Positions 11,938 to 47,739 of a stretch of DNA of 64,000 nucleotides are shown piece after piece. A model generated the notes under the pieces. The model did no database searches and was not told where the DNA came from. It saw only the letters and a list, made by a program, of their open reading frames with translations. The position numbers and the translations under genes are program-made. How positions within the stretch are numbered: position 1 is the stretch's first letter; each line of letters opens with the position of its first letter. The stretch lies in IMG/VR virus record IMGVR_UViG_3300024239_000011, positions 1-64,000 of that record, one strand, 5' to 3'.

Positions 11938-12598
11938 ATGGGTATTTCATTTTCAGGTGGAGTGATTCCTGTAGGGACTTTCAAAATCCATACCAATATT
12001 TCACCAGTATGGGTGACCGCAGCGGGTAGTTTGGGTAATGCTCATACTGGACAGAATTATGTCTTCAATTTTGAAGCTATCGATCCGGATAATGGACCAG
12101 TTACCAATCATTTTCGACATCCAAGGGCATGCCGGTGGTGAATGTGCAGCAATTAATGAAATTCAATTGTTTGATAGTACCGGGCAGGTTACTTTCACGA
12201 CTACATCAACCGATGTTTGGGATAGCGCAACTGGTAATATTCCATATTACTGGAATAATACCGGTTTGTGGGATCGTACCCGGTTAAATGATGGGTACAC
12301 GATTTATGATGGGTATACGGCGACAGCGTTCTTATATAATACCGCCGCAAATAATTCTTATTGGGCACGTGCATTATTGAATGTAACGGGTACTGGCGGA
12401 AAGGCTTTGTCAAAAGCCCGTGTTTGGGTGGGTGGTGGTGCCCGCATTCCATATTCCGTGAGGTTCTATGGTGTTGGAACTTACAATAAAACTGCACAAA
12501 TAAACAACCGCCAAAATACTGGATTGACTTTGTTGGGTTCAACCTCTTTTACGGTTTCCGACACATCGTTGCGTTACGCGGAAATCGTATTCCCATAA
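11938..12598 (+). pseudogene. MGISF-leader fibre/decoration gene, frameshifted near 12105
   Basis: Leader plus partial Ig repeat in one frame (stop at 12141); C-terminal beta domain (IIFDIQG...INEIQLFD) in another frame; TATAAATA at 11904-11911. Confidence 0.6.
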
Positions 12599-12634
12599 AA
12601 GTTTTGGGCGGGGAAAATCCCCGCCCAAAACCGA

Positions 12635-13114
12635 TTAAGCAGCCAACGGTTCCCAGACTGCCGAATACGAGTCGAGAATGTTGTCGCACTTGATGCCGTG
12701 GGTGTAACCCTTCTGATCATCCCAGATGCGACTCTTGGCATCGTCGGTGGGGAAACCCCACGGAAAAGCGGTCGCAAGGTCCGACATGGTGATCAGGCTG
12801 CCCTTGCGGTCGAACATGCGAGTCAGCGTGTACGCCCACATCACCGCATCGCCGGGCGAACTCATCAGGTTGCCGATAAACAGAACAACCGGCATCGATA
12901 CCTTGACACGTTCCGGCAAACGCTTGGTCATCACGGCGATAGTGAAGAATTGCATGAATTCCCGATGCTCACCATCCGGATCATAAGTAACCGGACGATT
13001 ATCCGCCATGGACGCTTGCAGGAAAACGTTCGCCTCTTCCGGCGACATCGGCGCACAATCCTTGTGCTCATCCACGTCCAGCAGAGATTTGGGGACATAA
13101 ATCATGATACGCAC
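12635..13114 (-). CDS. hypothetical protein
   Basis: 159-aa ORF followed by a terminator at about 12598-12633. Confidence 0.65.
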   Translation of the reverse strand: MRIMIYVPKSLLDVDEHKDCAPMSPEEANVFLQASMADNRPVTYDPDGEHREFMQFFTIAVMTKRLPERVKVSMPVVLFIGNLMSSPGDAVMWAYTLTRMFDRKGSLITMSDLATAFPWGFPTDDAKSRIWDDQKGYTHGIKCDNILDSYSAVWEPLAA

Positions 13115-13217
13115 CTGTTATTGTGATAGCCCAGATCATACACCAACTTTCAAATTAAGTCCATCCCTCTTATTCATCCCCAGATATAAATATCTTCAAA
13201 CCACATGAGGCGGCAAA

Positions 13218-14441
13218 ATGGGTATATCGTTCACAGGAAGTTTGATACCAGTTGGTACTTTCAAAATTAAAACCAATATTCCCCCGGTTTGGGTAACAGC
13301 AACCGGATCACTTGGGGAGGCTAATGGCGGACACCCATTTACATTTAATTTGTCGGCAACCGATCCAGAAAACGCACCATTAACGTATTCACTGATTTCT
13401 GGAATTATACCATCCGGGTTGACAATATCAGGTTCGCAAATTATCGGCACACCAGAAAATATCCCAGGTACATATACCTTTGTTGTTCGGGTTAGTGATG
13501 GCGAGGGTAATAATGATCGTCAATTCTCACTACAGGTCACCAATCAAACACCAATTTGGACGACGGCTGGTGGCTTGCTTGGCTCAGTAGTAAGCGGGGC
13601 TACGGTAAACTACACCCTGTCCGCAACTGATCCTAATAATGATCCAATAACCTATTCAATTGTAAGTGGATCATTACCAAGCGGAATAACATTAAACTCA
13701 TCAACTGGGGTTATTTCAGGTTTAACCACTGTTCTCGGCACTTATAATTTCACCGTTCAGGCGAATGATGGTCGTGGTGGATCAGTCAATCGTGCATTTG
13801 AATTTACGGTTAATCCCAACTATCCAAATACAGCATTTCTAGTTCACCCAACTTCATTAACATTTGCAGATAGCAAAAATAGTGTGCTTCCTTCAGCATC
13901 AACCGCAACGTACACAAATGGCGGTGGGTATGAAGTTATGGGGTTTAATCTAAACAATTATATTCGATACCCTAATGCGGCTGGGTTAAACATATCCACA
14001 GGTGATTTCACAGTCGAATTATGGTTCTATCCAAGATCAACCGGTACCTATCGTAATTTAGCAGTGTGGAAAGCAGGAAGTTTGTCCCCACTTTATTTTT
14101 CATATCATTCGGGCTATGCTCGCTTATGGGGTTCGTCGGCGGGCGGATCATGGGATTTGTTTAATGCATGGGGTTCATCTTCACCATTACCGGTAAACCA
14201 ATGGCACCATGTTGCTATATCACGAAGCAGTCAATACTATGTCATGCATGTTAATGGTGTTAAAACAAATGAACTAACAACTGCATTAAATCCAATGGCA
14301 TCTAATATGGGCGTTGTTCTTGGGTCGTATCAGGACACTGCCTCTGAATTCTTTGATGGCTATATGCGAGAATTCCGCGTAACTAAAGGACAAGCACTAT
14401 ACGGTAGTGGGAATTTCACCCCAGAAACCAATCTACTTTAA
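13218..14441 (+). CDS. MGISF-leader fibre/decoration protein: 2 Ig-like (He_PIG/cadherin-like) repeats + LamG/ConA domain
   Basis: ATDPENAPLTYS..SG.LPSG repeats; GDFTVELWFY, WHHVAISR, GYMREFRVTKG; TATAAATA at 13185-13192. Confidence 0.8.
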   Translation: MGISFTGSLIPVGTFKIKTNIPPVWVTATGSLGEANGGHPFTFNLSATDPENAPLTYSLISGIIPSGLTISGSQIIGTPENIPGTYTFVVRVSDGEGNNDRQFSLQVTNQTPIWTTAGGLLGSVVSGATVNYTLSATDPNNDPITYSIVSGSLPSGITLNSSTGVISGLTTVLGTYNFTVQANDGRGGSVNRAFEFTVNPNYPNTAFLVHPTSLTFADSKNSVLPSASTATYTNGGGYEVMGFNLNNYIRYPNAAGLNISTGDFTVELWFYPRSTGTYRNLAVWKAGSLSPLYFSYHSGYARLWGSSAGGSWDLFNAWGSSSPLPVNQWHHVAISRSSQYYVMHVNGVKTNELTTALNPMASNMGVVLGSYQDTASEFFDGYMREFRVTKGQALYGSGNFTPETNLL

Positions 14442-14446
14442 AAGAA

Positions 14447-14483
14447 GAAAGAAGGGGGAGCATTTTGCTCCCCCTTCTTTTTA
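14447..14483. terminator. bidirectional intrinsic terminator
   Basis: aagaagggggagca-tttt-gctcccccttctttt between convergent genes. Confidence 0.75.
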
Positions 14484-16880
14484 TAGCCCTTTGATAGTCA
14501 TTAACGGCCAAACTCTTGCTACTTTATTTGCAATACCCGCATTTACAAGCGTATCGATAGCAGGCAATGTGGGTTTATACATAGATGGTGCTTCTTCGAG
14601 TAGTGATTTCCGGTATTCGTCCGCTATGTCACGACGGCACATACGCGGATCAATTTTTGTTACCACTCGAAGTTCATTAAATTCCTCTACATCTGCACGA
14701 CGAGCAGATTGCCGTGGTGCCATTCTACCAGCCCCATGACATGCGCTACAAAGACAATCATCCAGCCCATTCCCACGAAGGATGAAACTACTACTTCCCA
14801 TACTACCGGGAATAATGACTGGATGACCGTAGGGGAATTCCGGATCAGTTGATGGCCCCCCGGCAGGGCATGCCCCTTTTCGATGAATATGATGGTCCCC
14901 ATTAGACCAAATAAGATTGTGGGGAGCATCATATACAAGACGAGCGTCGATTTCCCGTCCAAGACATTCCGACAGCGCCCGCACTACCATCAATCCAAGG
15001 AACATACGATTTGCAAACGCAAAGTTGGCGGCATTGTTCATTGCACTGATGTAAGCTTTAGCTGGTTCGCTATCTCCTGGAAGTAGATAGAAGTCGTGTT
15101 CGTGCTTGAGAGTTTTCGGAAACCATTTTTTTGCCACATCCATGAAGTGCTTACCAATCATATGTCCAATGGACACCGAACCGGTATGCGCCATGATTGT
15201 AATTGTGTTTTGCTTCAACCCCCAGGAATTGGCAGTATAACCGTCGAAGACTTCCTCAACCCGTTGCACTTCCACAAAGTGGTTTGATCCACCGATGCTG
15301 CCGATCTGGTCATCACGGGAGAATTCAGCACCAGACCCGCGCATGAAATCATCAAGATTGAAGATTCCCTCCGTGGGCAGAGAGCCAAGCAGATGCGACC
15401 GCATCACGTCGGCTACCTGTTGATCCTGGCGCCAGAATTTCCAGATGCCTTCGTCGGCATGGCGTTCGTCAAGGAGTCCCTGAAGACCGTTACGGAAGAT
15501 GGCATTGCGCTGGCGTGCCGACAGAGGAATGTTTCGTCCACCCTCGAAGAAGATGTACCGCAGTTTGCGATCCAGAGCTTCACCAAGGCGGGCAAACTCT
15601 TCCTGGGTCACATCGGTAGCCAGGAGGCGCATTCCACAGTTGCCCGTGATGGCAATATTGCCATTACGGCGTATAACAAAGAATGAAGACGGTACTTCAA
15701 AGCAGTATTCAAAACCATCAGGCGATTGGATGATTTGTGGTACAGACTTGGGGGTGCCGTTAATACCAATCTTTGTATTGGTATGCGCGAACACACGATA
15801 GTCTGTCTGTCCATCACGATAATGGATGTCTTCACGCAATACACTGCGATAACCAACTGCCATAAAAGCATAGTTGATAAAATCCGCAGATTGTTTGTCT
15901 CGCGTGTAAAAACATCGTTCTTTGTGGTTCCCATCCCAATGAAAAATTTCATCGGTGATGATTTTAAGTTGTTCGAATGATGCGTCCCATAGTTGTGTAA
16001 GCGAACGATGAATAATAGGACTATCGATGGTGATAGCCGTTCTATCCCCGTATTGCGCTTCGTGTGTTATTGGGATTCCCGCTTTCTGTAGAAGTTCCCG
16101 AGCGCGATTAATTTTTCGTTCTTTTTTTAAATTCAGGGTGCAGCGATTCCCATACTCGTACAGTCTTCCATCTGCACAAAGCATTATAATCACACGCAAT
16201 TCGTCGTCACTCATATCCAACTTCGTATGTCGCACGAACGACGACGGAGCCGTGAGGATACGATGACGATAGCCATTTTTCAAGTTGTTGTGTTGCGTAT
16301 AGACGCTTCCTGCGGTTTCCACCCCAAACATGGAGAAATCGTAGGTCTTGGTGAAGTGATATACCAACATACGATGGTCAAAGCTTAAAGCCTGATCCAC
16401 CCCGTATTTGGTCTTAAAATGGATCAGTTTTTCGCTTTGACGTTTGATGAAACGTGTAGGAGTCACAAATTCAGCAATACCCGTGTGCGGATCGAATTGA
16501 CAGACATCCTGCCCCTGCCAGTCGGCAATGCGTACCCATCCCGTTGGGGACAAGAATTCGGTATCAGGATCAACACAGCCAATATCTGAGCCAACCGCCT
16601 TAGGAATCACGAAGCCATAGGCATCGAGAACCGTTCCGATGGGGATACCGGCACCCTTGTGGAAATCTGGCGTGAGGACGATACGATCCAAGCGCGCTTC
16701 CGACCCCAAGAAACCATGCTCGCGCAGGCTCTTGATGGTGTCCACGACGGCACTGAAACGCACGATCTCATCGACGGATTGCCCGTCAATGAAGACATCC
16801 TCGTTCGCGTATAGGGTTATATCCACACCCGCAGGGGTAGGGATATGGACCCGGTTAGGGTCCAAACGTTGAAGAGACAT
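14481..16880 (-). CDS. rtcB: RtcB family RNA ligase, intein-containing
   Basis: PDFHKG, AVGSDIG|CGMRLL, GSIGGSNHFVE, HTGS, YDAPHN, HRKGA, PGSMG, SACHGAGR, EEAP..YK; CTAAATA upstream at 16939-16945. Confidence 0.92.
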   Translation of the reverse strand: MSLQRLDPNRVHIPTPAGVDITLYANEDVFIDGQSVDEIVRFSAVVDTIKSLREHGFLGSEARLDRIVLTPDFHKGAGIPIGTVLDAYGFVIPKAVGSDIGCVDPDTEFLSPTGWVRIADWQGQDVCQFDPHTGIAEFVTPTRFIKRQSEKLIHFKTKYGVDQALSFDHRMLVYHFTKTYDFSMFGVETAGSVYTQHNNLKNGYRHRILTAPSSFVRHTKLDMSDDELRVIIMLCADGRLYEYGNRCTLNLKKERKINRARELLQKAGIPITHEAQYGDRTAITIDSPIIHRSLTQLWDASFEQLKIITDEIFHWDGNHKERCFYTRDKQSADFINYAFMAVGYRSVLREDIHYRDGQTDYRVFAHTNTKIGINGTPKSVPQIIQSPDGFEYCFEVPSSFFVIRRNGNIAITGNCGMRLLATDVTQEEFARLGEALDRKLRYIFFEGGRNIPLSARQRNAIFRNGLQGLLDERHADEGIWKFWRQDQQVADVMRSHLLGSLPTEGIFNLDDFMRGSGAEFSRDDQIGSIGGSNHFVEVQRVEEVFDGYTANSWGLKQNTITIMAHTGSVSIGHMIGKHFMDVAKKWFPKTLKHEHDFYLLPGDSEPAKAYISAMNNAANFAFANRMFLGLMVVRALSECLGREIDARLVYDAPHNLIWSNGDHHIHRKGACPAGGPSTDPEFPYGHPVIIPGSMGSSSFILRGNGLDDCLCSACHGAGRMAPRQSARRADVEEFNELRVVTKIDPRMCRRDIADEYRKSLLEEAPSMYKPTLPAIDTLVNAGIANKVARVWPLMTIKGL
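15639..16577 (-). mobile_element. intein (313 aa) with LAGLIDADG endonuclease domain
   Basis: Begins CVDPDTEFLSPTGW, ends RRNGNIAITGN before extein Cys; internal IIMLCADG and EIFHWDG blocks. Confidence 0.9.
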
Positions 16881-16967
16881 TTTCCAACCTCGTTAGTGCG
16901 TGTTCAGCAGCCGCAGTAATACGAAGTTGGATGGTCATTATTTAGCACTCGTGGTTTCGATGGTCAA

Positions 16968-17112: not shown

Positions 17113-17157
17113 AAAATTACCGTAAGGTATTAATGCGCAAATGTCAAGCTCGGGTGG

Positions 17158-26151: not shown

Positions 26152-26874
26152 ATGCAGAGTAATACAAAGGTGGATGGTAAATCTACCATCCAGGCGTTTG
26201 ACGAAGGTTTGCGTCGTTTTTTGATCAACGTATACAATCTGATGGCGGTGGCGGTTGGGCTGACCGGTATTACCGCCTACGGTCTGGCGCAGAACCCAGA
26301 ACTGGTCAAGGCGATGTTCGATTCGATCATCCCCATGATTTTCTTCTTCGTTCTACCATTTGTCCTGCTTTTTGCCCTCAATGGCGAGCGGGCGCGTAAA
26401 CGATCCCGTGCCACTAATCTGGTACTGTTTGCCCTGTTTGCAGTTTCCATGGGAATCCTGTCGAGTGCCACTGCACTGGTGTATCCAGGGGTGATGGTTG
26501 CCAAGGCATTTCTCGTGTCAGTCGCAGTATTCGCGGGGGCGAGCCTGTACGGCTATACGACCAAAGCCGATCTGACTTCCGTGGGCAGTTTCTTGGTCAT
26601 TGGTTTATGGGGTCTGATCTTTGCAAGCGTTGTCAACCTGTTCCTCGGTTCCACCCTGATGGAATTTGTCATTTCGGTCGCTACTGTGATCGTTTTCACC
26701 GGACTGACTGCGTATGATACCCAGAAGATCAAGGAAACCTATTGCGAAGCCAATGGTTATGACCTATCGCATTATGTGATTATCGCGGCGATGGAACTGT
26801 ATCTCGACTTCCTGAACTTGTTCCTTGCTATCCTGCGCATTTTCGGCATCACGTCGAGCAGTAGCGACGATTAA
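26152..26874 (+). CDS. Bax inhibitor-1/YccA family membrane protein
   Basis: 7 TM; FLINVYNLM, YGYTTKADL, GLTAYDTQKIK, LYLDFLNLF. Confidence 0.9.
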   Translation: MQSNTKVDGKSTIQAFDEGLRRFLINVYNLMAVAVGLTGITAYGLAQNPELVKAMFDSIIPMIFFFVLPFVLLFALNGERARKRSRATNLVLFALFAVSMGILSSATALVYPGVMVAKAFLVSVAVFAGASLYGYTTKADLTSVGSFLVIGLWGLIFASVVNLFLGSTLMEFVISVATVIVFTGLTAYDTQKIKETYCEANGYDLSHYVIIAAMELYLDFLNLFLAILRIFGITSSSSDD

Positions 26875-28476: not shown

Positions 28477-28662
28477 TTACCAAGTAATGATGAGCTTTCC
28501 GTTACCACCGGGCTGGGTCATTTGACCACCAACGCCAATCCCAGGTATTTGGATTTCCTGGGTTAATACCGGAACCGCTTTGTAGGTTAACGTTGCCGGA
28601 TGGAATTTTTGATTTTATTTTAAACGTTCCAGCAGGAATAACGCCACCAGTGAAACACCCAT
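28477..28662 (-). pseudogene. frameshifted mini member of the MGISF-leader family
   Basis: FTGGVIPAGTFKIKSKIP is out of frame with the ATG; C-terminal PGGNGKLIITW matches 43348-43503; TATAAATA upstream. Confidence 0.6.
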
Positions 28663-28754
28663 TAGACCACCGCCTTACCCAAAACTATATTTATATGGTT
28701 GACTTTCAGCTAGTCATTGGATAGGTTTGACCGTCCATACCGTAGGGTAGTGTT

Positions 28755-29758: not shown

Positions 29759-30796
29759 ATGCGTAAACTCGTTACTATCCGTGAAGTATCGGAACTTCGT
29801 CCAATTCCGGATTCTGATTTTATTGAACTTGCTATCGTTGACGGATGGCAGGTAGTGGTCAAAAAGGGCGAATTCCAAGTTGGCGACCGTGGTCTATACC
29901 ACGAGATCGACAGCTTTGTTCCAGCATCAGATGAACGCTATGCGTTCCTGTCCAAGGATTTCCGCGAGTACGAAGGAAATCAGGGTGCCCGTCTGCGCAG
30001 CATGCGGTTCCGTGGACAGCTTTCTCAGGGTCTTATGCTGCCGATTTCGTCGTTCCCTGAAGTCGCTGATAAAGCGAACGGTGAGGATGTTACCGAAATC
30101 GTCGGTGTGATCAAATGGGAACCGGCAATGCCTGCCGAAATGAAGGGTGAAGCACGTGGTTTATTCCCGTCGTACATTCCGAAAACAGACGCCGAGCGAG
30201 TTCAGAACATCCCGGATGTATTGGAAATGAACAAGGGTCATCGGTTCGAGGCGTCCATTAAGCTTGATGGCACGTCTTGCACCATGTTCTATGGTGGTCC
30301 GGATCACGACAAGCACTTCGGTATTTGCTCGCGCAATTATGAACTGCGTGAGTCGGACACCCATACTATGTGGGTGCTGGCGCGCAAGTACCGGTTGCAC
30401 GAAATCCTTTCGGAGTTTGGCGAGTTCGCTATCCAGGGCGAAGTAATTGGCGAAGGGATTCAGGGCAACGTGGAGAAATTGAAGGGGCAGGATTTCTTCG
30501 TTTTCAATATCTACGACATCAAAGCAGGGCGTTATATGTCCCCGGTGGATCGTATGGCGGTGATCGACAAGATCAACGAACTATATGGGGTTGGTCTGAA
30601 AAGTGTCCCGGTGCTTGAACAGTCGATTGCTCTAGACGAGAAGTTCACGACTATTCAGGACATCCTTGACTATGCAGATGGTCCGTCCCTCAACCCCCAA
30701 GCTAAGCGTGAGGGTGTGGTGTTCAAGAGACTGGATGGTGGTGCTAGTTTTAAGAGCATATCAAACGCATTTCTACTAAAACACGGTGATCGGTAA
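29759..30796 (+). CDS. ATP-dependent RNA ligase, DRB0094/Rnl2-like family
   Basis: N-terminal OB-like RKLVTI..ELAIVDGWQVVVKKGEF; motif I SIKLDGTS; QGEVIG, FFVFNIYD, REGVVFK, SFKSIS. Confidence 0.88.
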   Translation: MRKLVTIREVSELRPIPDSDFIELAIVDGWQVVVKKGEFQVGDRGLYHEIDSFVPASDERYAFLSKDFREYEGNQGARLRSMRFRGQLSQGLMLPISSFPEVADKANGEDVTEIVGVIKWEPAMPAEMKGEARGLFPSYIPKTDAERVQNIPDVLEMNKGHRFEASIKLDGTSCTMFYGGPDHDKHFGICSRNYELRESDTHTMWVLARKYRLHEILSEFGEFAIQGEVIGEGIQGNVEKLKGQDFFVFNIYDIKAGRYMSPVDRMAVIDKINELYGVGLKSVPVLEQSIALDEKFTTIQDILDYADGPSLNPQAKREGVVFKRLDGGASFKSISNAFLLKHGDR

Positions 30797-30826: not shown

Positions 30827-32371
30827 TTATTGGAGAAAGTCTGCGAATTTTGCCTTCATATCGTCAGTAAGATCATGACGGCGTTGGAGTGCCCATTCCA
30901 TATTGACACCTTCTGCCGCTGCAATCCTCTTTATGAAATTACGAATATTCTCAGAAATCGGCATTTGGTCTTCTAGGATCACGAAGAACGCGACCACCAT
31001 GAACATTTCCTCGCGGCGTCGTTCCGGTGGTAGACTCGCATCATAGAGTTTCTTCAAATTGTCACCGATACCACTGGTATATTTGGACAGCGCATCCCAC
31101 AACAACGCCGCATGAACTTCTGGGTATGTACGCAGTGTTGACCGGCGATGATGGTCCCGAAGCATGGGTGGCACAATTGTCGCGGCTGCCTGGATTGGAA
31201 TGATCTTGAACATCTTGCGGATTTGCGGCAGTGGGATGTTATCCCATACTTCCGGTGACATGTTGTTCGCGATCAGATTGATTACGCTGACCACGCCGCA
31301 ATTGTTAACAAACACCCGCAGGTTCGTCATGACTTCCAGTGGGAAATCAGTGACGAGTTGGGATACTTGTTCAGGTGACAATCTCGACACAAGATTTTCC
31401 CATCCACAATCACTGGCAACGCCAATAAGGTCATGCACTGGCATGAGACGGATCAATTCGGCAAACTGCTTCATTTGTCCACCGAACAACCCGCTTCCGC
31501 TTTTTGCCATCTTGAGGACTGTATCGCGAATGACCGGCCAAATTTTTTCTTTCTCTTCCTTCGACATGTTTCGAATTTTAAATGCGTCAATCAATTTGCC
31601 ACTATTGGTCTTGATCAAGGCATTCGAACCGTCATTGTACAGATGCGGGTTAAGGCAATAAAGCGACGAAAGCTCACGCGGATTGACCTGATCCAGCCAT
31701 GCTTCGACGGTCTTCTTGAAGCCATCGACATTGGTGCCGTACACCGTGCTTTCCGGGTACAAGATGATGTCGTCGCGCACATCTGGATTGACGAAGGGTT
31801 TGATGAGCAATCGCCCGAGTGGATGGTTGATGTTCTTGTCATTGTTCTTGATCAAGTATGCGACCAACGTCCCTTCCTTGATGTCGAAGAACACGTAGTG
31901 GCTATTATCCGTTGTTTCGTCATCATTATTACGCATAGGCGTCAACTGCATACAGCTTTGCCAACCGCGTCCGGTGGACATGCTGGCGATATCATAGGGA
32001 TGTCGCGAAATGCACACGAGATATTCTTCGTTCTTCGACCCGGCACGGTTTGGATCATTCACGAATGTCTGAAGTAGTTCCGGGTCATCCTGAAGTATTC
32101 GCCCGATACGAATTTTCCGGCGTCCATCGGTGGCGATCCCAGCAGCATAATCTTCAATCCGATAGCCTTTTGATTCCACCTTGGAAGCAATGCGCTCCGG
32201 TGCCTGGATGGGTTCTGCCGACCCGTTTAGTGGAAGGTAAATGCGGTATGCGTTCTGGTCATCGGTGAAGCGTTTGAAGATATCCACGTAATTGGTTTTG
32301 TCCCACCCACGGCGGTACATCTTGGCTACGTTCAATGGAATAGTTTCGTTGATGATCTCGCGTATTTTCAT
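30827..32371 (-). CDS. leader-bearing protein (MKIREIINET) with ISRHPYDIASMST...WQSCM domain
   Basis: 514-aa ORF; GTAAATA upstream. Confidence 0.7.
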   Translation of the reverse strand: MKIREIINETIPLNVAKMYRRGWDKTNYVDIFKRFTDDQNAYRIYLPLNGSAEPIQAPERIASKVESKGYRIEDYAAGIATDGRRKIRIGRILQDDPELLQTFVNDPNRAGSKNEEYLVCISRHPYDIASMSTGRGWQSCMQLTPMRNNDDETTDNSHYVFFDIKEGTLVAYLIKNNDKNINHPLGRLLIKPFVNPDVRDDIILYPESTVYGTNVDGFKKTVEAWLDQVNPRELSSLYCLNPHLYNDGSNALIKTNSGKLIDAFKIRNMSKEEKEKIWPVIRDTVLKMAKSGSGLFGGQMKQFAELIRLMPVHDLIGVASDCGWENLVSRLSPEQVSQLVTDFPLEVMTNLRVFVNNCGVVSVINLIANNMSPEVWDNIPLPQIRKMFKIIPIQAAATIVPPMLRDHHRRSTLRTYPEVHAALLWDALSKYTSGIGDNLKKLYDASLPPERRREEMFMVVAFFVILEDQMPISENIRNFIKRIAAAEGVNMEWALQRRHDLTDDMKAKFADFLQ

Positions 32372-39563: not shown

Positions 39564-40184
39564 TCACCGTTCGATAAGGTCATCCGCTTTGCCCGCCAGG
39601 GTGACAAAGGGTCGAAGCCGATAGCTTTTGTAGACGTTGCTCCACACCGCCCCGCTTTTGGCCGGATAATAGTCATATTTGTCGGGATTGAAAATGAACA
39701 CGTCAAACCGTGGGTCTTTGACCAATTGCTTCCAAATATACACACCACCGCGTGTTTGAAGATCATCGGGCAATAGGTAATCACAGGCATTATCGAGCAA
39801 CCACTTATAGAGTTGTACCGAGAGGTTCTTCCCGCGAGCTTGTTCGCTGATGTAGACTGCTATGACCCGTTTACCGACACCCTTGAGGTCCGGGTTTGTC
39901 ACCGGGTAGCCATCCCCGAAAGGGGCGGTCGGAGCAATCAGCGCGATGTAAGCGATGGGGGTTCCATCGTTGAAGATATAGTAGATGGATTCCTTTTTGT
40001 CAGCGTTCAGCAATACGTAATATTCGCCAATGCGCCCAACGATTTCCATGTCTGGGGGTAGTGTTGGTTCGGTGGGTACCGGGAACAAGGTCAATTGTTT
40101 TGGCGTGAAGTCTTGATCTTGCGTCAAGTCCTTCAGGTGAGAACCATCAACTCCACCGCCAATGTCGATTTCATCTATCCGCAT
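39564..40184 (-). CDS. leader-bearing GNAT acetyltransferase
   Basis: MRIDEI; VIAVYISEQARGKNLSVQLYKWL...QTRGGVYIWKQL. Confidence 0.7.
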   Translation of the reverse strand: MRIDEIDIGGGVDGSHLKDLTQDQDFTPKQLTLFPVPTEPTLPPDMEIVGRIGEYYVLLNADKKESIYYIFNDGTPIAYIALIAPTAPFGDGYPVTNPDLKGVGKRVIAVYISEQARGKNLSVQLYKWLLDNACDYLLPDDLQTRGGVYIWKQLVKDPRFDVFIFNPDKYDYYPAKSGAVWSNVYKSYRLRPFVTLAGKADDLIER

Positions 40185-40808
40185 TTACAGTTTCCACCCT
40201 TCAAGTCCGCCCCCAAGCGGTTTGTCCAGATTGCCGCCGATAGCTGCCCGGTGGAACACCAGATCATCGTAGTCTTCCTGATCCGTCGAGGTGTTGGGCT
40301 TGAGCGGTTTGTTCGAACGCGGATGATCCACCTCGAATTCATGCGCCGGGTGTGGTGGGGCGTCGTGATCGATGTCGCCAATTGCGTATTCTTCCGCTTC
40401 GTTGCTGTCGGTATGGGTCGGTCCATAATTCATCCGTGATATGAAAGCGTTGTAGACCTGTTCCGCTTTGTGGATGTTGAAATAGCGAATGTCACGCACC
40501 GGGACGATCCGATAATTCTGACGCAATTTGGTATAGTTCAGTCCGATGCGGAATGGTTTCTGACCGGCGACTGCATAGGTCTTCAGAAGATCAAGGGACC
40601 GATCACGAGTGAGGCTGACGCCGGAAACTTCCTTGCCATCGACCAACTGATAACGCCCTTCTTCGTCCCGCTTCAACGTCCCATGAACGACATGGGTGGA
40701 TGCGCCACATTTGATACGGTTGGTCTTGAGCATGCGGCGCAAATGATCCCCTGAGGTGAAGTGGTAGATCAGTTGATCCGGGGCATTGATGATCTCGTCT
40801 ATTCTCAT
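40185..40808 (-). CDS. leader-bearing ART-like protein
   Basis: MRIDEIINA; LIYHFTS...MLKTNRI...GVSLTRD...NEAEEY. Confidence 0.55.
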   Translation of the reverse strand: MRIDEIINAPDQLIYHFTSGDHLRRMLKTNRIKCGASTHVVHGTLKRDEEGRYQLVDGKEVSGVSLTRDRSLDLLKTYAVAGQKPFRIGLNYTKLRQNYRIVPVRDIRYFNIHKAEQVYNAFISRMNYGPTHTDSNEAEEYAIGDIDHDAPPHPAHEFEVDHPRSNKPLKPNTSTDQEDYDDLVFHRAAIGGNLDKPLGGGLEGWKL

Positions 40809-41791
40809 TTCGTCCCCTCGCTGATCCGTGGGTCTTCGCGGTTGTACGTACCGGTGTTGCTCAATGCTGATTTGACTTGGTGGGGATCGAAAACCGCCAA
40901 CGTCAACGGCGCCCCTGGATGTTCACGGGTCCAGAACCCATCGAATTTGTTCCGGCGCATCCATGCCCGCACCGCAGGTTTTTCAAGGATACCGAAGTCA
41001 CCGCCCTTGAGATATCCCACTGCGGTTTTTGGTCCGTACAAGGCGCCAGGAAAAATCGCCTGGAAGTTCTTCTCAAGGAATGCTGCAAGCCTGTCTAGAT
41101 GCTCTTGGTTCTGGTAGTCGAACGGGTTCTCCATCCGCACGTAGCACGGCAGGACATGCCCGCCGCGTGCGAAGTAGGATGCCGTATCCGGGGAGGTCGC
41201 AAAGAAAATCGCGTTACCGCCGGTTCCCCGATTGCCTGGGAGCTTGAACTGATCAAAGGCGGGCTTGGAAGTCCCGTGGTACATCACCGCCGGGTTGCCG
41301 TCTTCATCCACGACTTTGCTGTTTCCGAACCATGCCCAGAACGCCGAATCTGGTTCAGGGAGGCGGGCTTCGAGGATGCTCTCAAACTTGCGTTTGTGGC
41401 GGTAGCTCCAAAATGCGGCGCCATCCGCTTCGAGGTTGCTGGACGAATCAATGGTGTAGCCGATGCGCTCAAGGTGGTCGTACAGCGCCGTTGCGATCCC
41501 ACGACGACGGAAGCTCGGCTTGGTTTCAATGCGGTGGAATTCGCCACTGTCATTTTCATCCGGATAGAACTTACCTTTGGCAACCTCTACCGCGTCGATG
41601 AAGGCACGGACGACCACCATAGTGGCGTCTTCATCTTCATCCGAGGGCTGACGTTGTGCAGTAACGTTCAGCACCGTTCCATCTGCCAATTTGTATTCAG
41701 CAGAGTTACGCGCAAAGCCCCCAACTACATCACCAAGTCTGGTATAGTGGCGATCTTGAAAACGCGCTCCGGTAATCTCAATAATTCTCAT
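40805..41791 (-). CDS. leader-bearing GNAT + ART-PolyVal-like fusion
   Basis: FRRRGIATALYD...GAAFW (GNAT); FWAWFGNSKVVDEDGNPAVMYHGT...AIFFATSPDTASYFA...CYVRMENPF...FDG...AVFDPHQVKS (ART). Confidence 0.75.
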   Translation of the reverse strand: MRIIEITGARFQDRHYTRLGDVVGGFARNSAEYKLADGTVLNVTAQRQPSDEDEDATMVVVRAFIDAVEVAKGKFYPDENDSGEFHRIETKPSFRRRGIATALYDHLERIGYTIDSSSNLEADGAAFWSYRHKRKFESILEARLPEPDSAFWAWFGNSKVVDEDGNPAVMYHGTSKPAFDQFKLPGNRGTGGNAIFFATSPDTASYFARGGHVLPCYVRMENPFDYQNQEHLDRLAAFLEKNFQAIFPGALYGPKTAVGYLKGGDFGILEKPAVRAWMRRNKFDGFWTREHPGAPLTLAVFDPHQVKSALSNTGTYNREDPRISEGTK

Positions 41792-42735: not shown

Positions 42736-42837
42736 AGTCCACCTCGTTGTTAGACCGGATATTTATAGCGGTCAAAAACAGGTGACGGCATTGACTTATG
42801 GTACAATCTTCAGTAGGATACCCACTCGTTCATCTGG

Positions 42838-43344
42838 GTGCCTACCATGCGATTGATGCGGACCAAAGCCGAACACAAAGACACCCCCGAATGGCTGGAA
42901 ATGTTTTTTACCAAGCTAAGAGTGGTGCGCCGTGTGAAACTGCGTCGCTTGTATGCGGAACAGGACGGGAAGTGCTGCTATTGTGGATGCAACACTAAGC
43001 TGGAAGGTGATGGTAGACGCCGGGCGACCCTGGAACACATCGTCCCGCAATTCCATGGCGGTACCGACGCCATGTGGAACCTAATGATGGCGTGTCAAGA
43101 GTGCAATTCGAAGCGCGGTTCCCGTCTGGATGCGATGACGTTTTTCATGTTGCGGTGTGATCCGGAGGCATGGGAACTTCGCAAGGCTGCTGCCCGCGAG
43201 AAACAGGAACGGGACGTGGCTCGCAAGGCTGCCCGAGCCGAACGTCACCCCGAAGTGGTGTACAAGTTGGCGGTCGTCTTGCATTTGTTCCCGGACTTCA
43301 ACACCCAGGTCAATGAGGCACTGGGGGAGTTGGAAGCGGCGTAA
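42838..43344 (+). CDS. HNH endonuclease
   Basis: QDGKCCYCG...TLEHIVPQFHGG...NLMMACQECNSKRG. Confidence 0.85.
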   Translation: MPTMRLMRTKAEHKDTPEWLEMFFTKLRVVRRVKLRRLYAEQDGKCCYCGCNTKLEGDGRRRATLEHIVPQFHGGTDAMWNLMMACQECNSKRGSRLDAMTFFMLRCDPEAWELRKAAAREKQERDVARKAARAERHPEVVYKLAVVLHLFPDFNTQVNEALGELEAA

Positions 43345-43347
43345 ACC

Positions 43348-43503
43348 TTACCCCCAGTTTATTATTACTTTGCCGTTCCCGCCGGTTGTGCGAGCATTGC
43401 CCATCCCCACCCCAGTTGTCCATCCTATTGCGGTGGCACGGTTCGCTGCGTTAATTTTGAAAGTCCCGACTGGTACTACACCACCTTTAAATGAAATGCC
43501 CAT
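43348..43503 (-). CDS. mini (51 aa) MGISF-leader protein with Gly-rich tail
   Basis: Hand translation MGISFKGGVVPVGTFKINAANRATAIGWTTGVGMGNARTTGGNGKVIINWG; CTAAATA and GGAGG upstream; absent from the ORF track. Confidence 0.65.
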   Translation of the reverse strand: MGISFKGGVVPVGTFKINAANRATAIGWTTGVGMGNARTTGGNGKVIINWG

Positions 43504-43626
43504 AAAAGCCTCCGATATTCCGGAGGTATTTAGTAGTAGAAAGAGAAGTACAGAACCGTTCTTAACCTAAACACGATCAACCGCACCCGGTATTTACCCA
43601 GGTGCGGTTGATCGCGGGTGGGACGC

Positions 43627-44301
43627 TTAGGCGCTGATCAGCAGACCGTCGTCGTCGCCACTCAAGAACACGTAGTTACCGCCGACCAGCTTGATCACGA
43701 TGACCTTGGCGGTGGAGATTTCGTCGCCCCGCACCTTCCAGTCGCCGCGTTCGGTGAACCACACGTTCAGGCATGCTTCACCGAAGGTCTTCTTGATGGC
43801 GGACGCCAGTTCTTCATCCGGCTCCATATAATCGATTTCGTTGGAGCGTTCGTCGGTGCTGCCGTCGCTGTAGAGCGTCTTGACCACCGACTTGACGACG
43901 AACAGGGTGTCGAACGAGCGGTCGAACTCGTAGTATTCTTCCCACTGTTCGACCGCCATGATGCGGACGAACTTCGCGAAAGCGTCGTTCATCAGCTTCA
44001 TCATCTTGTCGAAATCGTTGATGTCCTTCATGCAGTCGCGCACCAGAACGTCACGTTCGTTCGAACGACCTTCACCCTGATCATACTTGGTGTCGATCTT
44101 GGTATCCAGGGTGACAGTTTCGCCCTCGATCATCAGATACGCGATCTCGCGGATGCTGACGTATTTCGGGTTCTTGAAGAAATCCCGAATGCCGATCCCA
44201 TCGTTGACCGAGTGTCCAACGGTTTCGTTGGCAAACTTGACCTTGTTCTGGCGCTGGATTTCGTCGTCGTTGATCCCGATGATCGAATACTTGCGGCGCA
44301 T
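43627..44301 (-). CDS. hypothetical protein
   Basis: GGAGA RBS; TTGACA-N17-TATGAT at 44328-44356. Confidence 0.75.
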   Translation of the reverse strand: MRRKYSIIGINDDEIQRQNKVKFANETVGHSVNDGIGIRDFFKNPKYVSIREIAYLMIEGETVTLDTKIDTKYDQGEGRSNERDVLVRDCMKDINDFDKMMKLMNDAFAKFVRIMAVEQWEEYYEFDRSFDTLFVVKSVVKTLYSDGSTDERSNEIDYMEPDEELASAIKKTFGEACLNVWFTERGDWKVRGDEISTAKVIVIKLVGGNYVFLSGDDDGLLISA

Positions 44302-44396
44302 GGCGTCTCTCCCTGAACAATACGAGGATCATAACAGCCCTGGGTGGTGATGTCAATCATCGGCCAAAATAAATACGAATAGAATAGGAAACGCCG

Positions 44397-44945
44397 ATGC
44401 GAATTTTAGAAATAACCGAACATGTTGCGCGTGTGGTCGATACGGAGCCTCATAAAGGCATATGGTTCCGCCACGAAAGTCCTCATTGGATTACTCGGCT
44501 TCGACCGCTAACCTATGAAGAACTTAAAGTAGCGCGTCCTGAATATGATGTACCCGAACGTGTGAAAACTGAAAAACAATATCACGCAATGCTCCCTACA
44601 CATCCGGAAAATACCAGCTTCTTATATGCGACGGTGACGGGTTGTCACAAGATGCCAGACCCGCTCGATTACCTTGGTTTTACCTATTACTTCAAACTCA
44701 CCCCTGATCAAGTCGAACAGTCAATCTTTGACGTGGTTGATCGGAAGACATGGATGCAGCCAACTGTTGGGGCAGCCGGTTTCCGACAAGCCAAGGAAAT
44801 TTGGGACGCTCATTCGAACGAATTCAAATCCTATGACGACCCTGAAATTGGGCAAATTGATCCACGTATTGAAGTAATCATGCCATTTTCGGTCAGCCCA
44901 CTACTTTACATCCCACAAATTGAAGATAGACAATCTCCTAAATAG
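44397..44945 (+). CDS. leader-bearing hypothetical protein (MRILEITE)
   Basis: ATAAATA upstream; WFRHES motif. Confidence 0.7.
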   Translation: MRILEITEHVARVVDTEPHKGIWFRHESPHWITRLRPLTYEELKVARPEYDVPERVKTEKQYHAMLPTHPENTSFLYATVTGCHKMPDPLDYLGFTYYFKLTPDQVEQSIFDVVDRKTWMQPTVGAAGFRQAKEIWDAHSNEFKSYDDPEIGQIDPRIEVIMPFSVSPLLYIPQIEDRQSPK

Positions 44946-44970
44946 CAGTATGTGACAGGAGGAATTTAAA

Positions 44971-46914
44971 ATGGGTATTTCTTTTAGTGGTGGCGTAATT
45001 CCGATTGGTACTTTCAAAATAAAATCAAATATTCCTCCGGTATGGGTAACGGCAGCCGGGTCGCTTGGATCAGCTAATGGCGGGCAGCCATATACGTTCA
45101 ATTTATCGGCAACTGATCCAGAGAACGCCCCTCTTACGTACACGGTTGTTGGTGGTTCGCTACCAGCCGGTTTAGGCATCAGTGGACCACAAATCATCGG
45201 TACCCCGATCAATAACCCTGGCACGTATCAATTCACGGTGCGGGTATTTGACGGTGAAACGGCGGCTGATCGCGTTTTTACAATCGATGTAACCAATCAA
45301 ACACCGATCTGGACTACTGCGGGCGGATCGCTGATTGACGCCACTGAGAATGCCGCCTATTCATTCTCGTTTGAAGCTGCCGATCCCAATAATGATACCG
45401 TAACCTATTCAATTTCATCTGGCTCGTTACCAGCGGGTCTTACACTTGGTTCAACCGGTGAATTGTCTGGTACACCTACGCAATTAGGTATTAGCAATTT
45501 TACAGTACGGGCTACTGATACATTAGGCGCTTTTGTTGATCGCGCGTTTTCAATAAACGTTGCATCGGCTGGTGATCCATATTGGACTGGTGTTACTTTG
45601 TTGATGCACATGAACGGTAATTTCACCGATCAAAAAGGGCATACATTTACAGCAACCAATGCAACCGCTACCGGCGCCGGTAAATTTGGGTCAAATTCTG
45701 CAAGTATTGGTACGGGATATATTACAACTCCATCTAGCAGTGATTGGCAATTTAAGTCCAGTGATTTTACAGTCGAAAGCTGGGTCTATGTTCCAGATGC
45801 AACGTATCTTGCTAATTCTGCCGTGATTGTTGGAACTCACGGTACCGGATCAACTGACGGGTGGACGGTATATTTAAATACCAATGGTACTGCGACCGGA
45901 TGGACAACAAGTTCGGGTGGGTTTGGAACCGGAAATCATGCAGTCACGTCCGCGTCTCCTATAAATTATGCGTCGTGGAACCATGTTGCGTTTGTACGTA
46001 ATGGTAACGTTTTGACGATTTACCTGAACGGCGTAGGAAATTCAGTTACTATATCTAATGGGTATAGTGTTTATAACACTCCCAATAGTTTACGAATTGG
46101 CGCAAACGTTAATAACGGTAACAATTTTACAAAATCAGGCGCATTGATTGATGAAGTGCGAATCACCAAAGGCGTGGCTCGTTACACTACCAATTTTGCA
46201 CCACCACAGTCTGCCTTCCCGGATACTGTCAAGCCCGATCCGTATTGGGCAAATACCAGTATGCTGTTGCGGTTTGATAATTCACTGTCTGATGTGACTG
46301 GGAAACATACTATTACTGGATCAAGCACCACATACGCTGGTTCTTTAATCGGAAATACGTGTCTACAAATCAATGCTAATGGGTATATCTCCACGCCTGC
46401 CCATGCCGATTTCAATTTCGGTGCGGGAGATTTTACGGTTGAGATGTGGATTTGGACACCATCAACTTCCGCTCTGTCCCAAATACCAATGCTTTTCTGT
46501 CAGTACCAAAGTTATAACCAACCAATAAATGCCACACAGGTATATTTCAACCCTGATGGTACTATTGTTGGATACATAACTGCTAATGGAAAGCACGAAG
46601 TAAATGCGGATCACATTGGCGTAATGTCTTCAGCAATAACATTCAGTGAGTGGAACCATGTTGCGTTTGTACGTAATGGCACGAAACTACAACTGTATGT
46701 TAATGGCAACGGTCAAGCCGATGGTGGGTCTAATGTTCCAGTAGGGTACACTGCCTTTAGTTCGAATCTTCCAGTCACTATCGGTGCATACAATTCAACG
46801 GGTTATCACCGTTTCCAAGCCACCACTTATATTGATGAAGTCCGGGTGACCAAAGGGGTCGCGCGCTATACAAGCAACTTCACTCCGCTAAAAATACCAC
46901 ACGCAGCAGTGTAA
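44971..46914 (+). CDS. MGISF-leader fibre/decoration protein: 2 Ig-like repeats + 2 LamG domains
   Basis: DPENAPLTY..GSLPAG repeats; DPYWTGVTLLMHMNG, DFTVESWV, WNHVAFVR, IDEVRITKGVARYT twice. Confidence 0.85.
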   Translation: MGISFSGGVIPIGTFKIKSNIPPVWVTAAGSLGSANGGQPYTFNLSATDPENAPLTYTVVGGSLPAGLGISGPQIIGTPINNPGTYQFTVRVFDGETAADRVFTIDVTNQTPIWTTAGGSLIDATENAAYSFSFEAADPNNDTVTYSISSGSLPAGLTLGSTGELSGTPTQLGISNFTVRATDTLGAFVDRAFSINVASAGDPYWTGVTLLMHMNGNFTDQKGHTFTATNATATGAGKFGSNSASIGTGYITTPSSSDWQFKSSDFTVESWVYVPDATYLANSAVIVGTHGTGSTDGWTVYLNTNGTATGWTTSSGGFGTGNHAVTSASPINYASWNHVAFVRNGNVLTIYLNGVGNSVTISNGYSVYNTPNSLRIGANVNNGNNFTKSGALIDEVRITKGVARYTTNFAPPQSAFPDTVKPDPYWANTSMLLRFDNSLSDVTGKHTITGSSTTYAGSLIGNTCLQINANGYISTPAHADFNFGAGDFTVEMWIWTPSTSALSQIPMLFCQYQSYNQPINATQVYFNPDGTIVGYITANGKHEVNADHIGVMSSAITFSEWNHVAFVRNGTKLQLYVNGNGQADGGSNVPVGYTAFSSNLPVTIGAYNSTGYHRFQATTYIDEVRVTKGVARYTSNFTPLKIPHAAV

Positions 46915-46980
46915 TCGGATAGACGAAGATGGGAGATATAATTTCCCATCTTATTTGATTTTCGTGCCAGGAGGCTCAGA

Positions 46981-47739
46981 ATGGGTATTGCATTTAAGGG
47001 ATCGTTGATCCCGATTGGATCATTTAAGGTTAAAACAAATATCCCACCGGACCAACATTGGTCCAACGTTAGCCTGCTCATGCATATGAATGGTGCGAAT
47101 AATTCGGGAATATTTGTAGATGAAATCGGTCATGCAATTACTCGCGCATCACCGAATGTCCAGATAATTACGGCTGACAGCAAATTTGGTGATGCGTCGG
47201 CAGTATTTGATGGTTCTTCTCTTGGGTATTTGTCCACACCATATTCTACCGACCTAAATTTCGGCGCAAATAACTACACCATTGAAGCTTGGGTGAAAAC
47301 AACATCATCCAAAGGTGAAATCGTGTCAAGTTTTGTCCCAAGTGGAACATATGGCGGATGGTCATTTGGGATCGGGTCTGCGTCCAATGATGGCACCCTT
47401 AATCATTATCAAGGCGACGGGGTGACAGTTGGTGGGTGGACTTCTGGAACAACCCCGGTCAATGATGGTCTCTGGCACCATGTAGCGGTGACGCGCGTTG
47501 GAACTACAATCAAATACTTTGTTGATGGTGTTTTGGATGCTGTGAAAACAAATACAAATAATGGTGCAAACAACACTAATTGTCCCATTCGTATCGGGGC
47601 AAGTTCGAACGACACCCTTTCAATACTCCGTCCATTCACCGGTAATATAGATGAATTGCGGATTACCAAAGGCGTAGCTCGTTACACTGGTACGTTTACG
47701 GTCCCTACATCTGAGTTCCCAACTCACACCGTGGTTTGA
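46981..47739 (+). CDS. MGISF-leader protein: single LamG domain
   Basis: MGIAFKGSLIPIGSFKVKTNIPP joined directly to WSNVSLLMHMNG...WHHVAVTR...IDELRITKGVARYT. Confidence 0.85.
   Translation: MGIAFKGSLIPIGSFKVKTNIPPDQHWSNVSLLMHMNGANNSGIFVDEIGHAITRASPNVQIITADSKFGDASAVFDGSSLGYLSTPYSTDLNFGANNYTIEAWVKTTSSKGEIVSSFVPSGTYGGWSFGIGSASNDGTLNHYQGDGVTVGGWTSGTTPVNDGLWHHVAVTRVGTTIKYFVDGVLDAVKTNTNNGANNTNCPIRIGASSNDTLSILRPFTGNIDELRITKGVARYTGTFTVPTSEFPTHTVV

What the first reader, a model, noticed from the sequence alone, without database searches (positions are those of the whole stretch)
11938..47739. Six-member family with a shared 20-aa MGISFxGGxIPxGTFKI leader and interchangeable Ig/LamG/Gly-rich cargo
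Seen: the same leader at 11938(+), 13218(+), 28662(-, broken), 43503(-, 51 aa), 44971(+) and 46981(+). The cargo is 0-2 Ig-like repeats, 0-2 LamG lectin domains, or a short Gly-rich tail. Members are scattered on both strands and most have their own TAAATA box. Inference: the leader is a docking peptide that plugs variable carbohydrate-binding modules into a common virion site (head or tail hairs or side fibres). This would give a mix-and-match adhesion repertoire, and a second portable tag distinct from the capsid-targeting leader.
Basis: partly seen in the sequence, partly recalled or inferred. Interest (0 to 1): 0.7.

Follow-up and report, generated by a model that had tools for sequence, protein, structure and literature searches.

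The report
Shared N-terminal tag on phage adhesins
A giant T4-like phage (about 870 kb) carries at least ten scattered late genes whose products all start with the same 19-residue peptide followed by different binding domains; the peptide is most likely a docking tag that fixes these accessory adhesins to one site on the virus particle, but this is inferred, not shown.

Summary
The peptide MGI[SAL]FxG[GSN][VL]xPxG[TSL]FK[IV] begins an ORF at all six stated places. A leader profile run over all six frames of the 543-kb contig finds only these six plus two more (361367+, 442457-). At least two further members lie on a second contig of the same genome, which totals about 870 kb.

Corrections:
- The true leader is residues 1-19/21. 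"NIPPVW..GSLG" is the first strand of a He_PIG Ig domain.
- Member 11938 is also broken, by a 464-bp deletion. An intact 374-aa allele exists in another sample.
- Member 28662 is a fixed pseudogene.
- The short Gly-rich forms resemble the C-terminal end of a Gly_rich_2 domain.

The leader is kept by selection on the protein: every invariant residue except the start Met uses two or more synonymous codons. AlphaFold2 models it as a low-confidence extension outside the Ig fold. Identity between paralogs falls from leader through Ig1 and Ig2 to 20-28% in the cargo.

Nine of ten members have TAAATA about 30 nt upstream, a T4-late-like promoter motif that is strongly enriched before genes. One member closes a tail-fibre operon. 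Related huge phages carry the same leader with other cargo (beta-propellers, Gly_rich_2, DUF7483).

Best reading: a virion-docking tag, analogous to the conserved N-terminal peptides of branched receptor-binding proteins. The partner and virion location are unknown.

The parts
11906..11911 (+). TAAATA core of a TATAAATA box, 32 nt before the ATG of member 11938
11938..12141 (+). Member 1, broken: leader plus the start of Ig1 (67-aa stub). A 464-bp deletion has its junction at 12100-12107.
   Evidence: the intact 374-aa allele is in L005:7875-8999
12108..12598 (+). Out-of-frame remainder of member 1: an all-beta C-terminal domain of about 160 aa. There is a weak F5/8-type-C lead only. It lies inside the 186-aa ORF 12038-12598.
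13187..13192 (+). TAAATA core of a TATAAATA box, 31 nt before the ATG of member 13218
13218..14441 (+). Member 2, 407 aa: leader + 2 He_PIG + 1 Laminin_G_3
14448..14480 (.). 15-bp-stem hairpin between the convergent genes 13218 and RtcB (terminator-like)
28505..28662 (-). Pseudogene of a short Gly-rich member. The leader is frame-shifted after codon 4, and a second shift lies before the GGNGKLIITW end. The sequence is identical in 4 assemblies.
28688..28693 (-). TAAATA core of a TATAAATA box, 31 nt before the ATG of the pseudogene
43348..43503 (-). Member, 51 aa: leader plus a 30-aa Gly-rich tail ending GGNGKVIINWG. The protein is identical on 9 contigs.
43527..43532 (-). TAAATA (CTAAATA), 29 nt before the ATG of the 51-aa member. 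It is preceded by a 19-bp-stem hairpin at 43572-43616.
44939..44944 (+). TAAATA (CTAAATA), 32 nt before the ATG of member 44971
44971..46914 (+). Member, 647 aa: leader + 2 He_PIG + 2 Laminin_G_3
46926..46952 (+). Terminator-like hairpin between members 44971 and 46981
46981..47739 (+). Member, 252 aa: leader joined directly to one Laminin_G_3, with no Ig and no TAAATA box

Best explanation
The first ~19 residues (MGISFxGGxIPxGTFKI) are a portable docking peptide. It has no fixed structure of its own and becomes ordered by binding one conserved site on the virion, probably by adding strands to a partner's beta-sheet. A stalk of two He_PIG Ig domains then holds out a variable distal module: LamG, beta-propeller, Gly-rich, or another beta-domain. 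The genes are separate late-transcribed units scattered through an ~870-kb T4-like phage genome. They are dispensable accessories that are gained, diverge and decay. The favoured site is a tail-fibre or baseplate branching point, by analogy with the conserved N-terminal peptides of secondary receptor-binding proteins.

Shown: the family, its domain make-up, protein-level selection on the leader, the promoter motif, and the decay of two copies.

Inferred: late expression, virion location, docking, and ligand binding.
For: 1. The leader occurs only at ORF N-termini: 8 hits in 543 kb with E<=2e-7, next best 0.09.
2. Selection acts on the peptide, not on the DNA. Paralog pairs differ at 197 synonymous and 172 non-synonymous codons in the first 19 codons, and the eight invariant residues after the start Met each use at least 2 codons.
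3. Identity falls along the protein: leader 53-89%, Ig1 47-72%, Ig2 49-60%, cargo 20-28%.
4. AlphaFold2 on a 17-sequence alignment gives residues 1-20 pLDDT ~58-60 and no secondary structure, while the Ig domain scores above 90. PDB profile matches start at position 22.
5. TAAATA occurs 314 times in the contig, as composition predicts, but 113 of 757 ORFs have it 18-50 nt upstream, with a peak at 30-39 nt. These ORFs include fibre-like, baseplate-like and lysozyme-like genes. In the 543-kb contig 7 of 8 members have it (Fisher p=1e-5), as do P0003 and P0128. The genome has a T4 gp23-type capsid gene.
6. P0128 (666 aa) starts 30 nt after a run of four same-strand genes of 901, 333, 1071 and 440 aa. 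Three of these (901, 1071 and 440 aa) match tail-fibre, tail or virion-structural PHROGs; the 333-aa gene matches none.
7. The LamG cargo matches virion structural and baseplate proteins of T4-like cyanophages.
8. A profile search of 1.84 billion proteins finds the leader only at N-termini of ~17 proteins. These include members from other huge-phage contigs with RCC1 or PQQ-like propellers, Gly_rich_2 or DUF7483 cargo.
9. Precedent: short conserved N-terminal peptides (7 residues upward) dock secondary receptor-binding proteins onto T4gp10-like branching domains. Removing the peptide abolishes incorporation (PMC6872550; PMC13352976).
10. Three sub-threshold gp9/10_N-like domains exist in the genome, two of them in small late-promoter proteins.
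Against: - There is no direct evidence that any member is in the virion, and no partner has been identified.
- Most members sit among non-structural genes.
- The cargo are Ig/LamG modules, not the trimeric tailspikes seen in known branched systems.
- The gp9/10-like matches are below the Pfam cut-off, and none lies in the searched 195-kb part of contig 2, which includes the fibre operon next to P0128.
- The homotrimer prediction gave no answer.
- RNA-labelled runs held only stray reads, probably DNA.
- The TAAATA motif also precedes many non-structural genes, for example homing endonucleases. It marks timing at most, not location.
Confidence: 0.5

Rival explanations
1. Capsid decoration variant. 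The same tag binds the gp23-like capsid lattice, so the family is a set of Hoc-like head fibres with reversed polarity (anchor at the N-terminus). A mixture of binding modules would then cover the very large head.
For: The Ig-string architecture resembles Hoc (PMC10385173 abstract). The genome has a gp23-type capsid protein. A huge capsid offers hundreds of equivalent sites, which would suit many paralogs. N-terminal arms of some decoration proteins bind by strand addition (own knowledge: lambda gpD).
Against: Hoc anchors through a folded C-terminal domain, not a 19-residue N-terminal peptide. The only informative gene neighbourhood points to tail fibres. No capsid contact was tested.
Confidence: 0.2
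2. Oligomerisation tag. The leader makes homo- or hetero-oligomers of family members (a foldon-like beta-hairpin bundle) rather than docking to another protein.
For: The pattern of conserved Gly, Pro and aromatic residues fits short strands and turns. The peptide is shared by all paralogs, so mixed oligomers would be possible.
Against: The trimer prediction of leader+Ig1 scored 0.00 in both runs, which the tool rates as no evidence either way. The monomer model shows no strands in residues 1-20. Oligomerisation alone would not explain why unrelated cargo must share the tag.
Confidence: 0.1
3. Not virion-associated. The leader is an export or targeting signal, or a recognition tag for a modifying enzyme. 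The proteins would then act on or outside the infected cell, for example in surface masking, superinfection exclusion or debris binding.
For: Most members lie outside structural modules. Two distant members directly follow sulfotransferase genes. Member 361367 lies 0.9 kb from phage flagellin, FlbT and FlaF genes.
Against: The leader has no basic n-region, and its best 9-residue hydropathy is ~1.5, so it is unlike Sec, Tat or lipoprotein signals. Flagellar export signals are not conserved in sequence like this (own knowledge). The late-promoter motif and the fibre-operon member favour a structural role.
Confidence: 0.12
4. No separate function. The leader is an inherited N-terminal cap of the first Ig domain, kept by descent from one ancestral gene.
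For: Most members keep leader+Ig1+Ig2 together, and Ig1 is nearly as conserved as the leader.
Against: The leader persists where the Ig domains are absent (46981, 43503, 28662). It is not part of He_PIG in solved structures or in internal repeats. Synonymous sites have diverged widely while the residues are kept. It is also conserved across distant phage lineages whose Ig domains are only 35-50% identical.
Confidence: 0.08

Closest known systems
Conserved N-terminal docking peptides of secondary receptor-binding proteins in branched RBP systems (K1-5/K1E/SP6; Klebsiella phages KP32, KP34, Menlow, PhiK64-1/RaK2; PMC6872550, PMC13352976)
   Same: A short N-terminal peptide is shared by otherwise different surface proteins of one phage. 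The peptide is lineage-specific. Conservation is high at the N-terminus and low in the distal specificity module. Truncated members occur. In those systems the peptide has been shown to be needed for incorporation.
   Different: There is no sequence similarity. Here the cargo are Ig-stalk plus LamG, propeller or Gly-rich modules rather than trimeric beta-helix depolymerases. The genes are dispersed over hundreds of kb, each with its own late promoter, instead of sitting beside the anchor RBP. A T4gp10-like branching partner is not established (sub-threshold hits only).
T4 Hoc and Hoc-like head decoration proteins (PMC10385173)
   Same: A string of Ig-like domains is held out from the particle by one small conserved attachment element. 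The proteins are dispensable and variable, and an adhesin-like role is proposed.
   Different: Hoc's anchor is a folded C-terminal capsid-binding domain, and it is a single gene. Here the anchor candidate is a 19-residue N-terminal peptide on at least 10 paralogs, with added non-Ig distal domains.
T2/S16-type gp38 adhesins at the tip of the long tail fibre (own knowledge, not checked in a paper here)
   Same: The adhesin gene is the last one of the fibre operon. Attachment is through the N-terminus. Glycine-rich motifs lie in the distal part (compare P0128's position and the Gly-rich members).
   Different: gp38 uses a folded N-terminal attachment domain and is a single gene. No homology was detected.
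T4 capsid-targeting sequence of internal head proteins (own knowledge)
   Same: A short N-terminal tag shared by unrelated cargo directs them to one place in the particle.
   Different: The CTS sends proteins inside the head and is cut off at L/I-x-E sites. The present leader has no Glu, and its cargo are outward-facing binding domains. A different N-terminal family in this genome (M[RK]IxE[IL]) fits that motif better.

Membership tests
Branched-RBP secondary proteins with a conserved docking peptide | A short N-terminal peptide shared by several otherwise different proteins of one phage | tested here: met
   8 copies in the 543-kb contig and at least 2 on contig 2
Branched-RBP secondary proteins with a conserved docking peptide | A primary RBP or adaptor with a T4gp10-like branching domain that receives the peptide | tested here: inconclusive
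   PF07880 gives three matches below the cut-off (E 2e-5 to 4e-4) in G000. Two are small late-promoter proteins that match a baseplate-protein PHROG. There is no match in G001, the searched 195-kb part of contig 2, which holds the fibre operon.
Branched-RBP secondary proteins with a conserved docking peptide | Cargo is a trimeric tailspike or depolymerase | tested here: not met
   The cargo is He_PIG, Laminin_G_3, propeller or Gly_rich_2
Branched-RBP secondary proteins with a conserved docking peptide | The peptide is required for incorporation into the virion | not testable with these tools
   This needs virions or a cultured relative
Hoc-like capsid decoration proteins | A string of Ig-like domains | tested here: met
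   Two He_PIG domains in most members
Hoc-like capsid decoration proteins | [quoted passage not shown] | tested here: not met
   The conserved element is N-terminal, and the C-termini are the most variable part
Pfam He_PIG (PF05345) and Laminin_G_3 (PF13385) domain proteins | Score above the curated cut-off | tested here: met
   He_PIG 91-93 bits (cut-off 24); Laminin_G_3 68-111 bits (cut-off 27.6)
Sec/Tat/lipoprotein signal peptides | A basic n-region, a hydrophobic h-region, and a lipobox Cys for lipoproteins | tested here: not met
   No K/R in the first 5 residues, maximum 9-residue Kyte-Doolittle mean ~1.5, and no Cys. This is a simple criterion; no dedicated predictor was run.
T4-type late genes | A TATAAATA-like element a fixed short distance upstream of the start | tested here: met
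   The TAAATA start lies 29-32 nt before the ATG in 5 window members. Genome-wide the motif peaks 30-39 nt upstream of ORFs.
T4-type late genes | A phage late sigma factor (gp55/gp33 type) and late timing of transcription | not tested
   No gp55/gp33 search was run, and no usable RNA data exist

The most novel reading that the evidence does not exclude
The 19-residue peptide is a natural, transferable display tag. Any domain fused behind it would be loaded onto one repeated site of an ~870-kb megaphage particle. The phage would then carry a mixed, evolvable coat of ten or more different monomeric binding modules: a built-in phage-display system unlike the trimeric tailspike branching known so far.
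Probability: 0.3. Interest if true: 0.65.

Novelty: new variant of a known kind. Interest (0 to 1): 0.45.

Why it matters
If the tag is a docking peptide, it shows how the largest phages might widen what they bind without rebuilding their tail machinery. New binding domains would be added behind a fixed 19-residue plug, as independent late genes that can be gained and lost. It would extend the 'conserved peptide plus branching domain' principle, proven so far in small Klebsiella and coliphage podoviruses, to monomeric Ig/LamG adhesins in a T4-like megaphage. It would also give a very short natural tag for displaying proteins on large phage particles. The family is also a handy marker for a little-known clade of huge phages.

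Tried and rejected
- Complex prediction of a homotrimer of leader+Ig1: verdict 'no answer' (score 0.00). It is not used as evidence.
- AlphaFold2 of the C-terminal domain of member 1 with a 2-sequence alignment: pLDDT 52. The Foldseek search against PDB then gave nothing with E<0.1. The ESM-Atlas lead to F5/8 type C (score 0.85) stays a lead only.
- RNA-labelled wastewater runs held only a few single-read contigs, flagged 'probably DNA'. There is no expression evidence.
- IMG/VR scans with the leader and with three distant members found only the same genome, plus one Ig-only match.
- Cultured phages: tblastn found one possible distant member, in Sinorhizobium phage Phosso. It starts MGIRFGAT and is followed by He_PIG. 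Its upstream neighbour, which overlaps it by ATGA, could not be shown to be fibre-like. That synteny argument was dropped.
- Recent DNA copying or a cassette-exchange mechanism was rejected. Leader codons differ widely at synonymous sites, and the LamG domains are only 25-37% identical to each other.
- A signal-peptide reading was rejected on composition.
- A double-glycine or protease-cleaved leader was considered and set aside: the segment before the GG is only 6-7 residues, and there is no Glu for a T4-type cut. This is sequence-based reasoning only.
Full report
**Observation**

ORF listing and a fuzzy peptide search place the peptide MGISFxGGxIPxGTFKI at the first codon of ORFs at 11938(+), 13218(+), 43503(-), 44971(+) and 46981(+). 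A frame-shifted copy lies at 28662(-).

The window is bases 1-64000 of a 543,035-bp contig. A leader profile run over all 15,810 six-frame segments of that contig finds eight copies with E 5e-15 to 2e-7. These are the six above plus 361367(+, 660 aa) and 442457(-, 547 aa). The next best hit has E=0.09, and every copy sits at an ORF start.

Pfam gives the following cargo:
- 13218: two He_PIG Ig domains and one Laminin_G_3
- 44971: two He_PIG and two Laminin_G_3
- 46981: one Laminin_G_3 and no Ig
- the 51-aa product of 43503: no match

**Corrections to the description**

1. The leader is shorter than the 20+ residues suggested. The words NIPPVW.T..GSLG belong to the He_PIG domain. They open internal Ig repeats in an unrelated protein (L013), and a family profile matches solved structures only from position 22 onward.

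2. Member 11938 is broken. Against an intact 374-aa allele in another metagenome (L005:7875-8999), the window lacks 464 bp between two copies of an 8-nt repeat, with the junction at 12100-12107. This shifts the frame. The intact protein is leader + 2 He_PIG + an all-beta domain of about 160 aa. That domain has one homolog in 5.8 billion proteins and only a weak F5/8-type-C lead. The deletion allele recurs in three other samples.

3. The 28662 copy is identical in four independent assemblies, so it is a fixed pseudogene with two frame breaks. Its last frame ends GGNGKLIITW, which makes it a paralog of the 51-aa protein (ending GGNGKVIINWG).

4. A distant member, P0153, carries a full Gly_rich_2 domain that ends GGSGIVIVRY. 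The short Gly-rich forms therefore look like a leader joined to the last strand of such a domain. They may be deletion relics of the kind seen directly in member 1. This is inference.

**The genome**

The window's contig is Ga0247724_1000001. A second contig from the same sample (326,607 bp) abuts the window's start and carries at least two further members. One is P0003 (439 aa). The other is P0128 (666 aa), which starts MGLSFKGG and has 2 Ig + 2 LamG. An independent ENA assembly joins both contigs in one of 869,618 bp. Other assemblies also continue past the end of contig 1. The genome is therefore about 870 kb.

It encodes a T4 gp23-type major capsid protein above the Pfam cut-off and a sheath-like protein below the cut-off. 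The DNA occurs in subsurface, soil and wastewater runs.

**Evidence that the peptide itself is under selection**

Among eight paralogs, the first 19 codons differ at 197 synonymous and 172 non-synonymous codon positions, summed over pairs. The eight invariant residues after the start Met (G2, I3, F5, G7, P11, G13, F15, K16) each use two or more codons. The similarity is thus not a recent DNA copy and cannot support homologous exchange.

Between paralogs, identity is 53-89% in the leader, 47-72% in Ig1, 49-60% in Ig2 and 20-28% in the cargo. The LamG domains are 25-37% identical to each other.

AlphaFold2 on a 17-sequence alignment of leader+Ig1 gives pLDDT ~58-60 and no secondary structure for residues 1-20. 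The Ig domain scores above 90.

**Transcription signals**

TAAATA occurs 314 times on both strands, as base composition predicts. However, 113 of 757 ORFs have it 18-50 nt upstream, with a sharp peak at 30-39 nt. Genes behind it include fibre-like, baseplate-like and lysozyme-like genes, and also homing endonucleases. This resembles the T4 late promoter TATAAATA (own knowledge).

In five window members the motif starts 29-32 nt before the ATG, and an AGGAG/GAGG-type ribosome site follows. In the 543-kb contig, 7 of 8 members have it against 109 of 752 other ORFs (Fisher p=1e-5). P0003 and P0128 have it too. Hairpins flank several members, which fits independent transcription units.

**Context**

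Most members sit among unrelated small genes. The exception is P0128. It starts 30 nt after a same-strand run of genes of 901, 333, 1071 and 440 aa. Three of these (901, 1071 and 440 aa) match tail-fibre, tail, virion-structural and baseplate-connector PHROGs. The 333-aa gene matches nothing.

**Spread**

A profile search of 1.84 billion representative proteins finds the leader only at the N-termini of about 17 proteins. Besides this genome's members, they are:
- P0135, P0143 and P0150: RCC1 propeller cargo
- P0153: Gly_rich_2
- P0156: DUF7483
- P0172: PQQ-like propeller
- P0139, P0166 and P0185

Where context is available, they lie on contigs with huge-phage hallmarks such as ribosomal protein S21, IF-1 and NUMOD3. 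Their leaders are lineage-specific variants, for example MGLSFSGALTPTGRTTTRA.

**Interpretation**

The peptide is kept by selection across old paralogs and lineages. It is modelled outside the first folded domain, without confident structure of its own. It is followed by a conserved stalk and a fast-diverging distal module, and it sits on late-promoter genes, one of them in a fibre operon. This pattern is best explained as a docking tag for a common virion site.

The closest established system is the branched receptor-binding-protein design. There, secondary RBPs carry a short conserved N-terminal peptide (as short as seven residues) that binds a T4gp10-like branching domain of an anchored RBP (PMC6872550). 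Deleting either element abolishes incorporation (PMC13352976).

Membership of that family is not claimed:
- The cargo are not trimeric tailspikes.
- The genes are dispersed.
- Only sub-threshold gp9/10_N-like domains were found. Two are small late-promoter proteins at 107,228-108,049 and 407,133-407,654.

A Hoc-like capsid site is a live alternative. The rivals are oligomerisation, export or modification targeting, and a functionless inherited cap. They are less well supported for the reasons given under each.

**What failed**

The fold of member 1's C-terminal domain could not be modelled. RNA-labelled runs gave no expression evidence. A possible cultured relative, Sinorhizobium phage Phosso, has one candidate member, but its neighbour could not be shown to be a fibre.

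**Verdict**

The docking interpretation is plausible and has a validated precedent, but it rests on indirect evidence (confidence 0.5). It is a new variant of a known kind of system, of moderate interest.

Noticed in passing
whole genome; window 1-8400 and L001, L002, L033: The window's 543,035-bp contig and a 326,607-bp contig of the same sample are joined in an independent 869,618-bp assembly. Other assemblies continue past the contig end. This would be a T4-like phage genome of about 870 kb, above the 735 kb quoted as the largest known in a 2026 review (PMC13282480).
   Followed up: partly
window 6935-58563 (14 genes, e.g. 30827-32371, 39564-41791, 44397-44945, 48308-49690, 57101-58563); 30 in the 543-kb contig: A second N-terminal family: about 30 otherwise different proteins start M-[RK]-[ILV]-x-[ED]-[ILV] (MRIDEI, MKIREI, MRIQEIL and so on). 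The I-x-E pattern recalls T4 prohead-protease/capsid-targeting sites. Several have TAAATA boxes.
   Followed up: partly
window 14481-16880 (-): The 799-aa RtcB RNA ligase matches Pfam RtcB in two pieces (about 1-100 and 409-798). This leaves an insert of about 300 aa that looks like an intein.
   Followed up: partly
genome 358,888-360,504 (L007:3525-5138, minus strand): The phage encodes a flagellin (Flagellin_N + Flagellin_C) together with FlbT and FlaF, the alphaproteobacterial flagellin regulators. They lie 0.9 kb from family member 361367. This hints at an alphaproteobacterial host.
   Followed up: partly
contigs of P0143 and P0153 (sample 3300059473; no DNA held): Two distant family members each lie directly downstream of a sulfotransferase gene.
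   Followed up: no
genome-wide; e.g. window 11906, 13187, 28693, 43532, 44939: TAAATA ([ACT]TAAATA) behaves as a promoter element. About half of all copies lie 18-50 nt upstream of ORFs. It precedes 113 of 757 ORFs, including GIY-YIG/HNH endonuclease genes.
   Followed up: yes
window 40805-41791 (-), 10891-11271 (-), 26152-26874 (+), 29759-30796 (+): Unusual accessory genes in the window: a GNAT + ART-PolyVal ADP-ribosyltransferase, a SET-domain protein, a Bax1-I family membrane protein and an RNA ligase.
   Followed up: no
genome 107,228-108,049 (+) and 407,133-407,654 (-): Two small late-promoter proteins have sub-threshold T4 gp9/10 N-terminal-like domains that match a baseplate-protein PHROG. 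They are candidate docking partners for the leader.
   Followed up: partly
window 7344-7529 (-): A 61-aa ORF starts MGLSFGGN, with TAAATA 23 nt upstream. The leader profile does not support it (E=15), so it may be a chance resemblance or a very decayed copy.
   Followed up: partly
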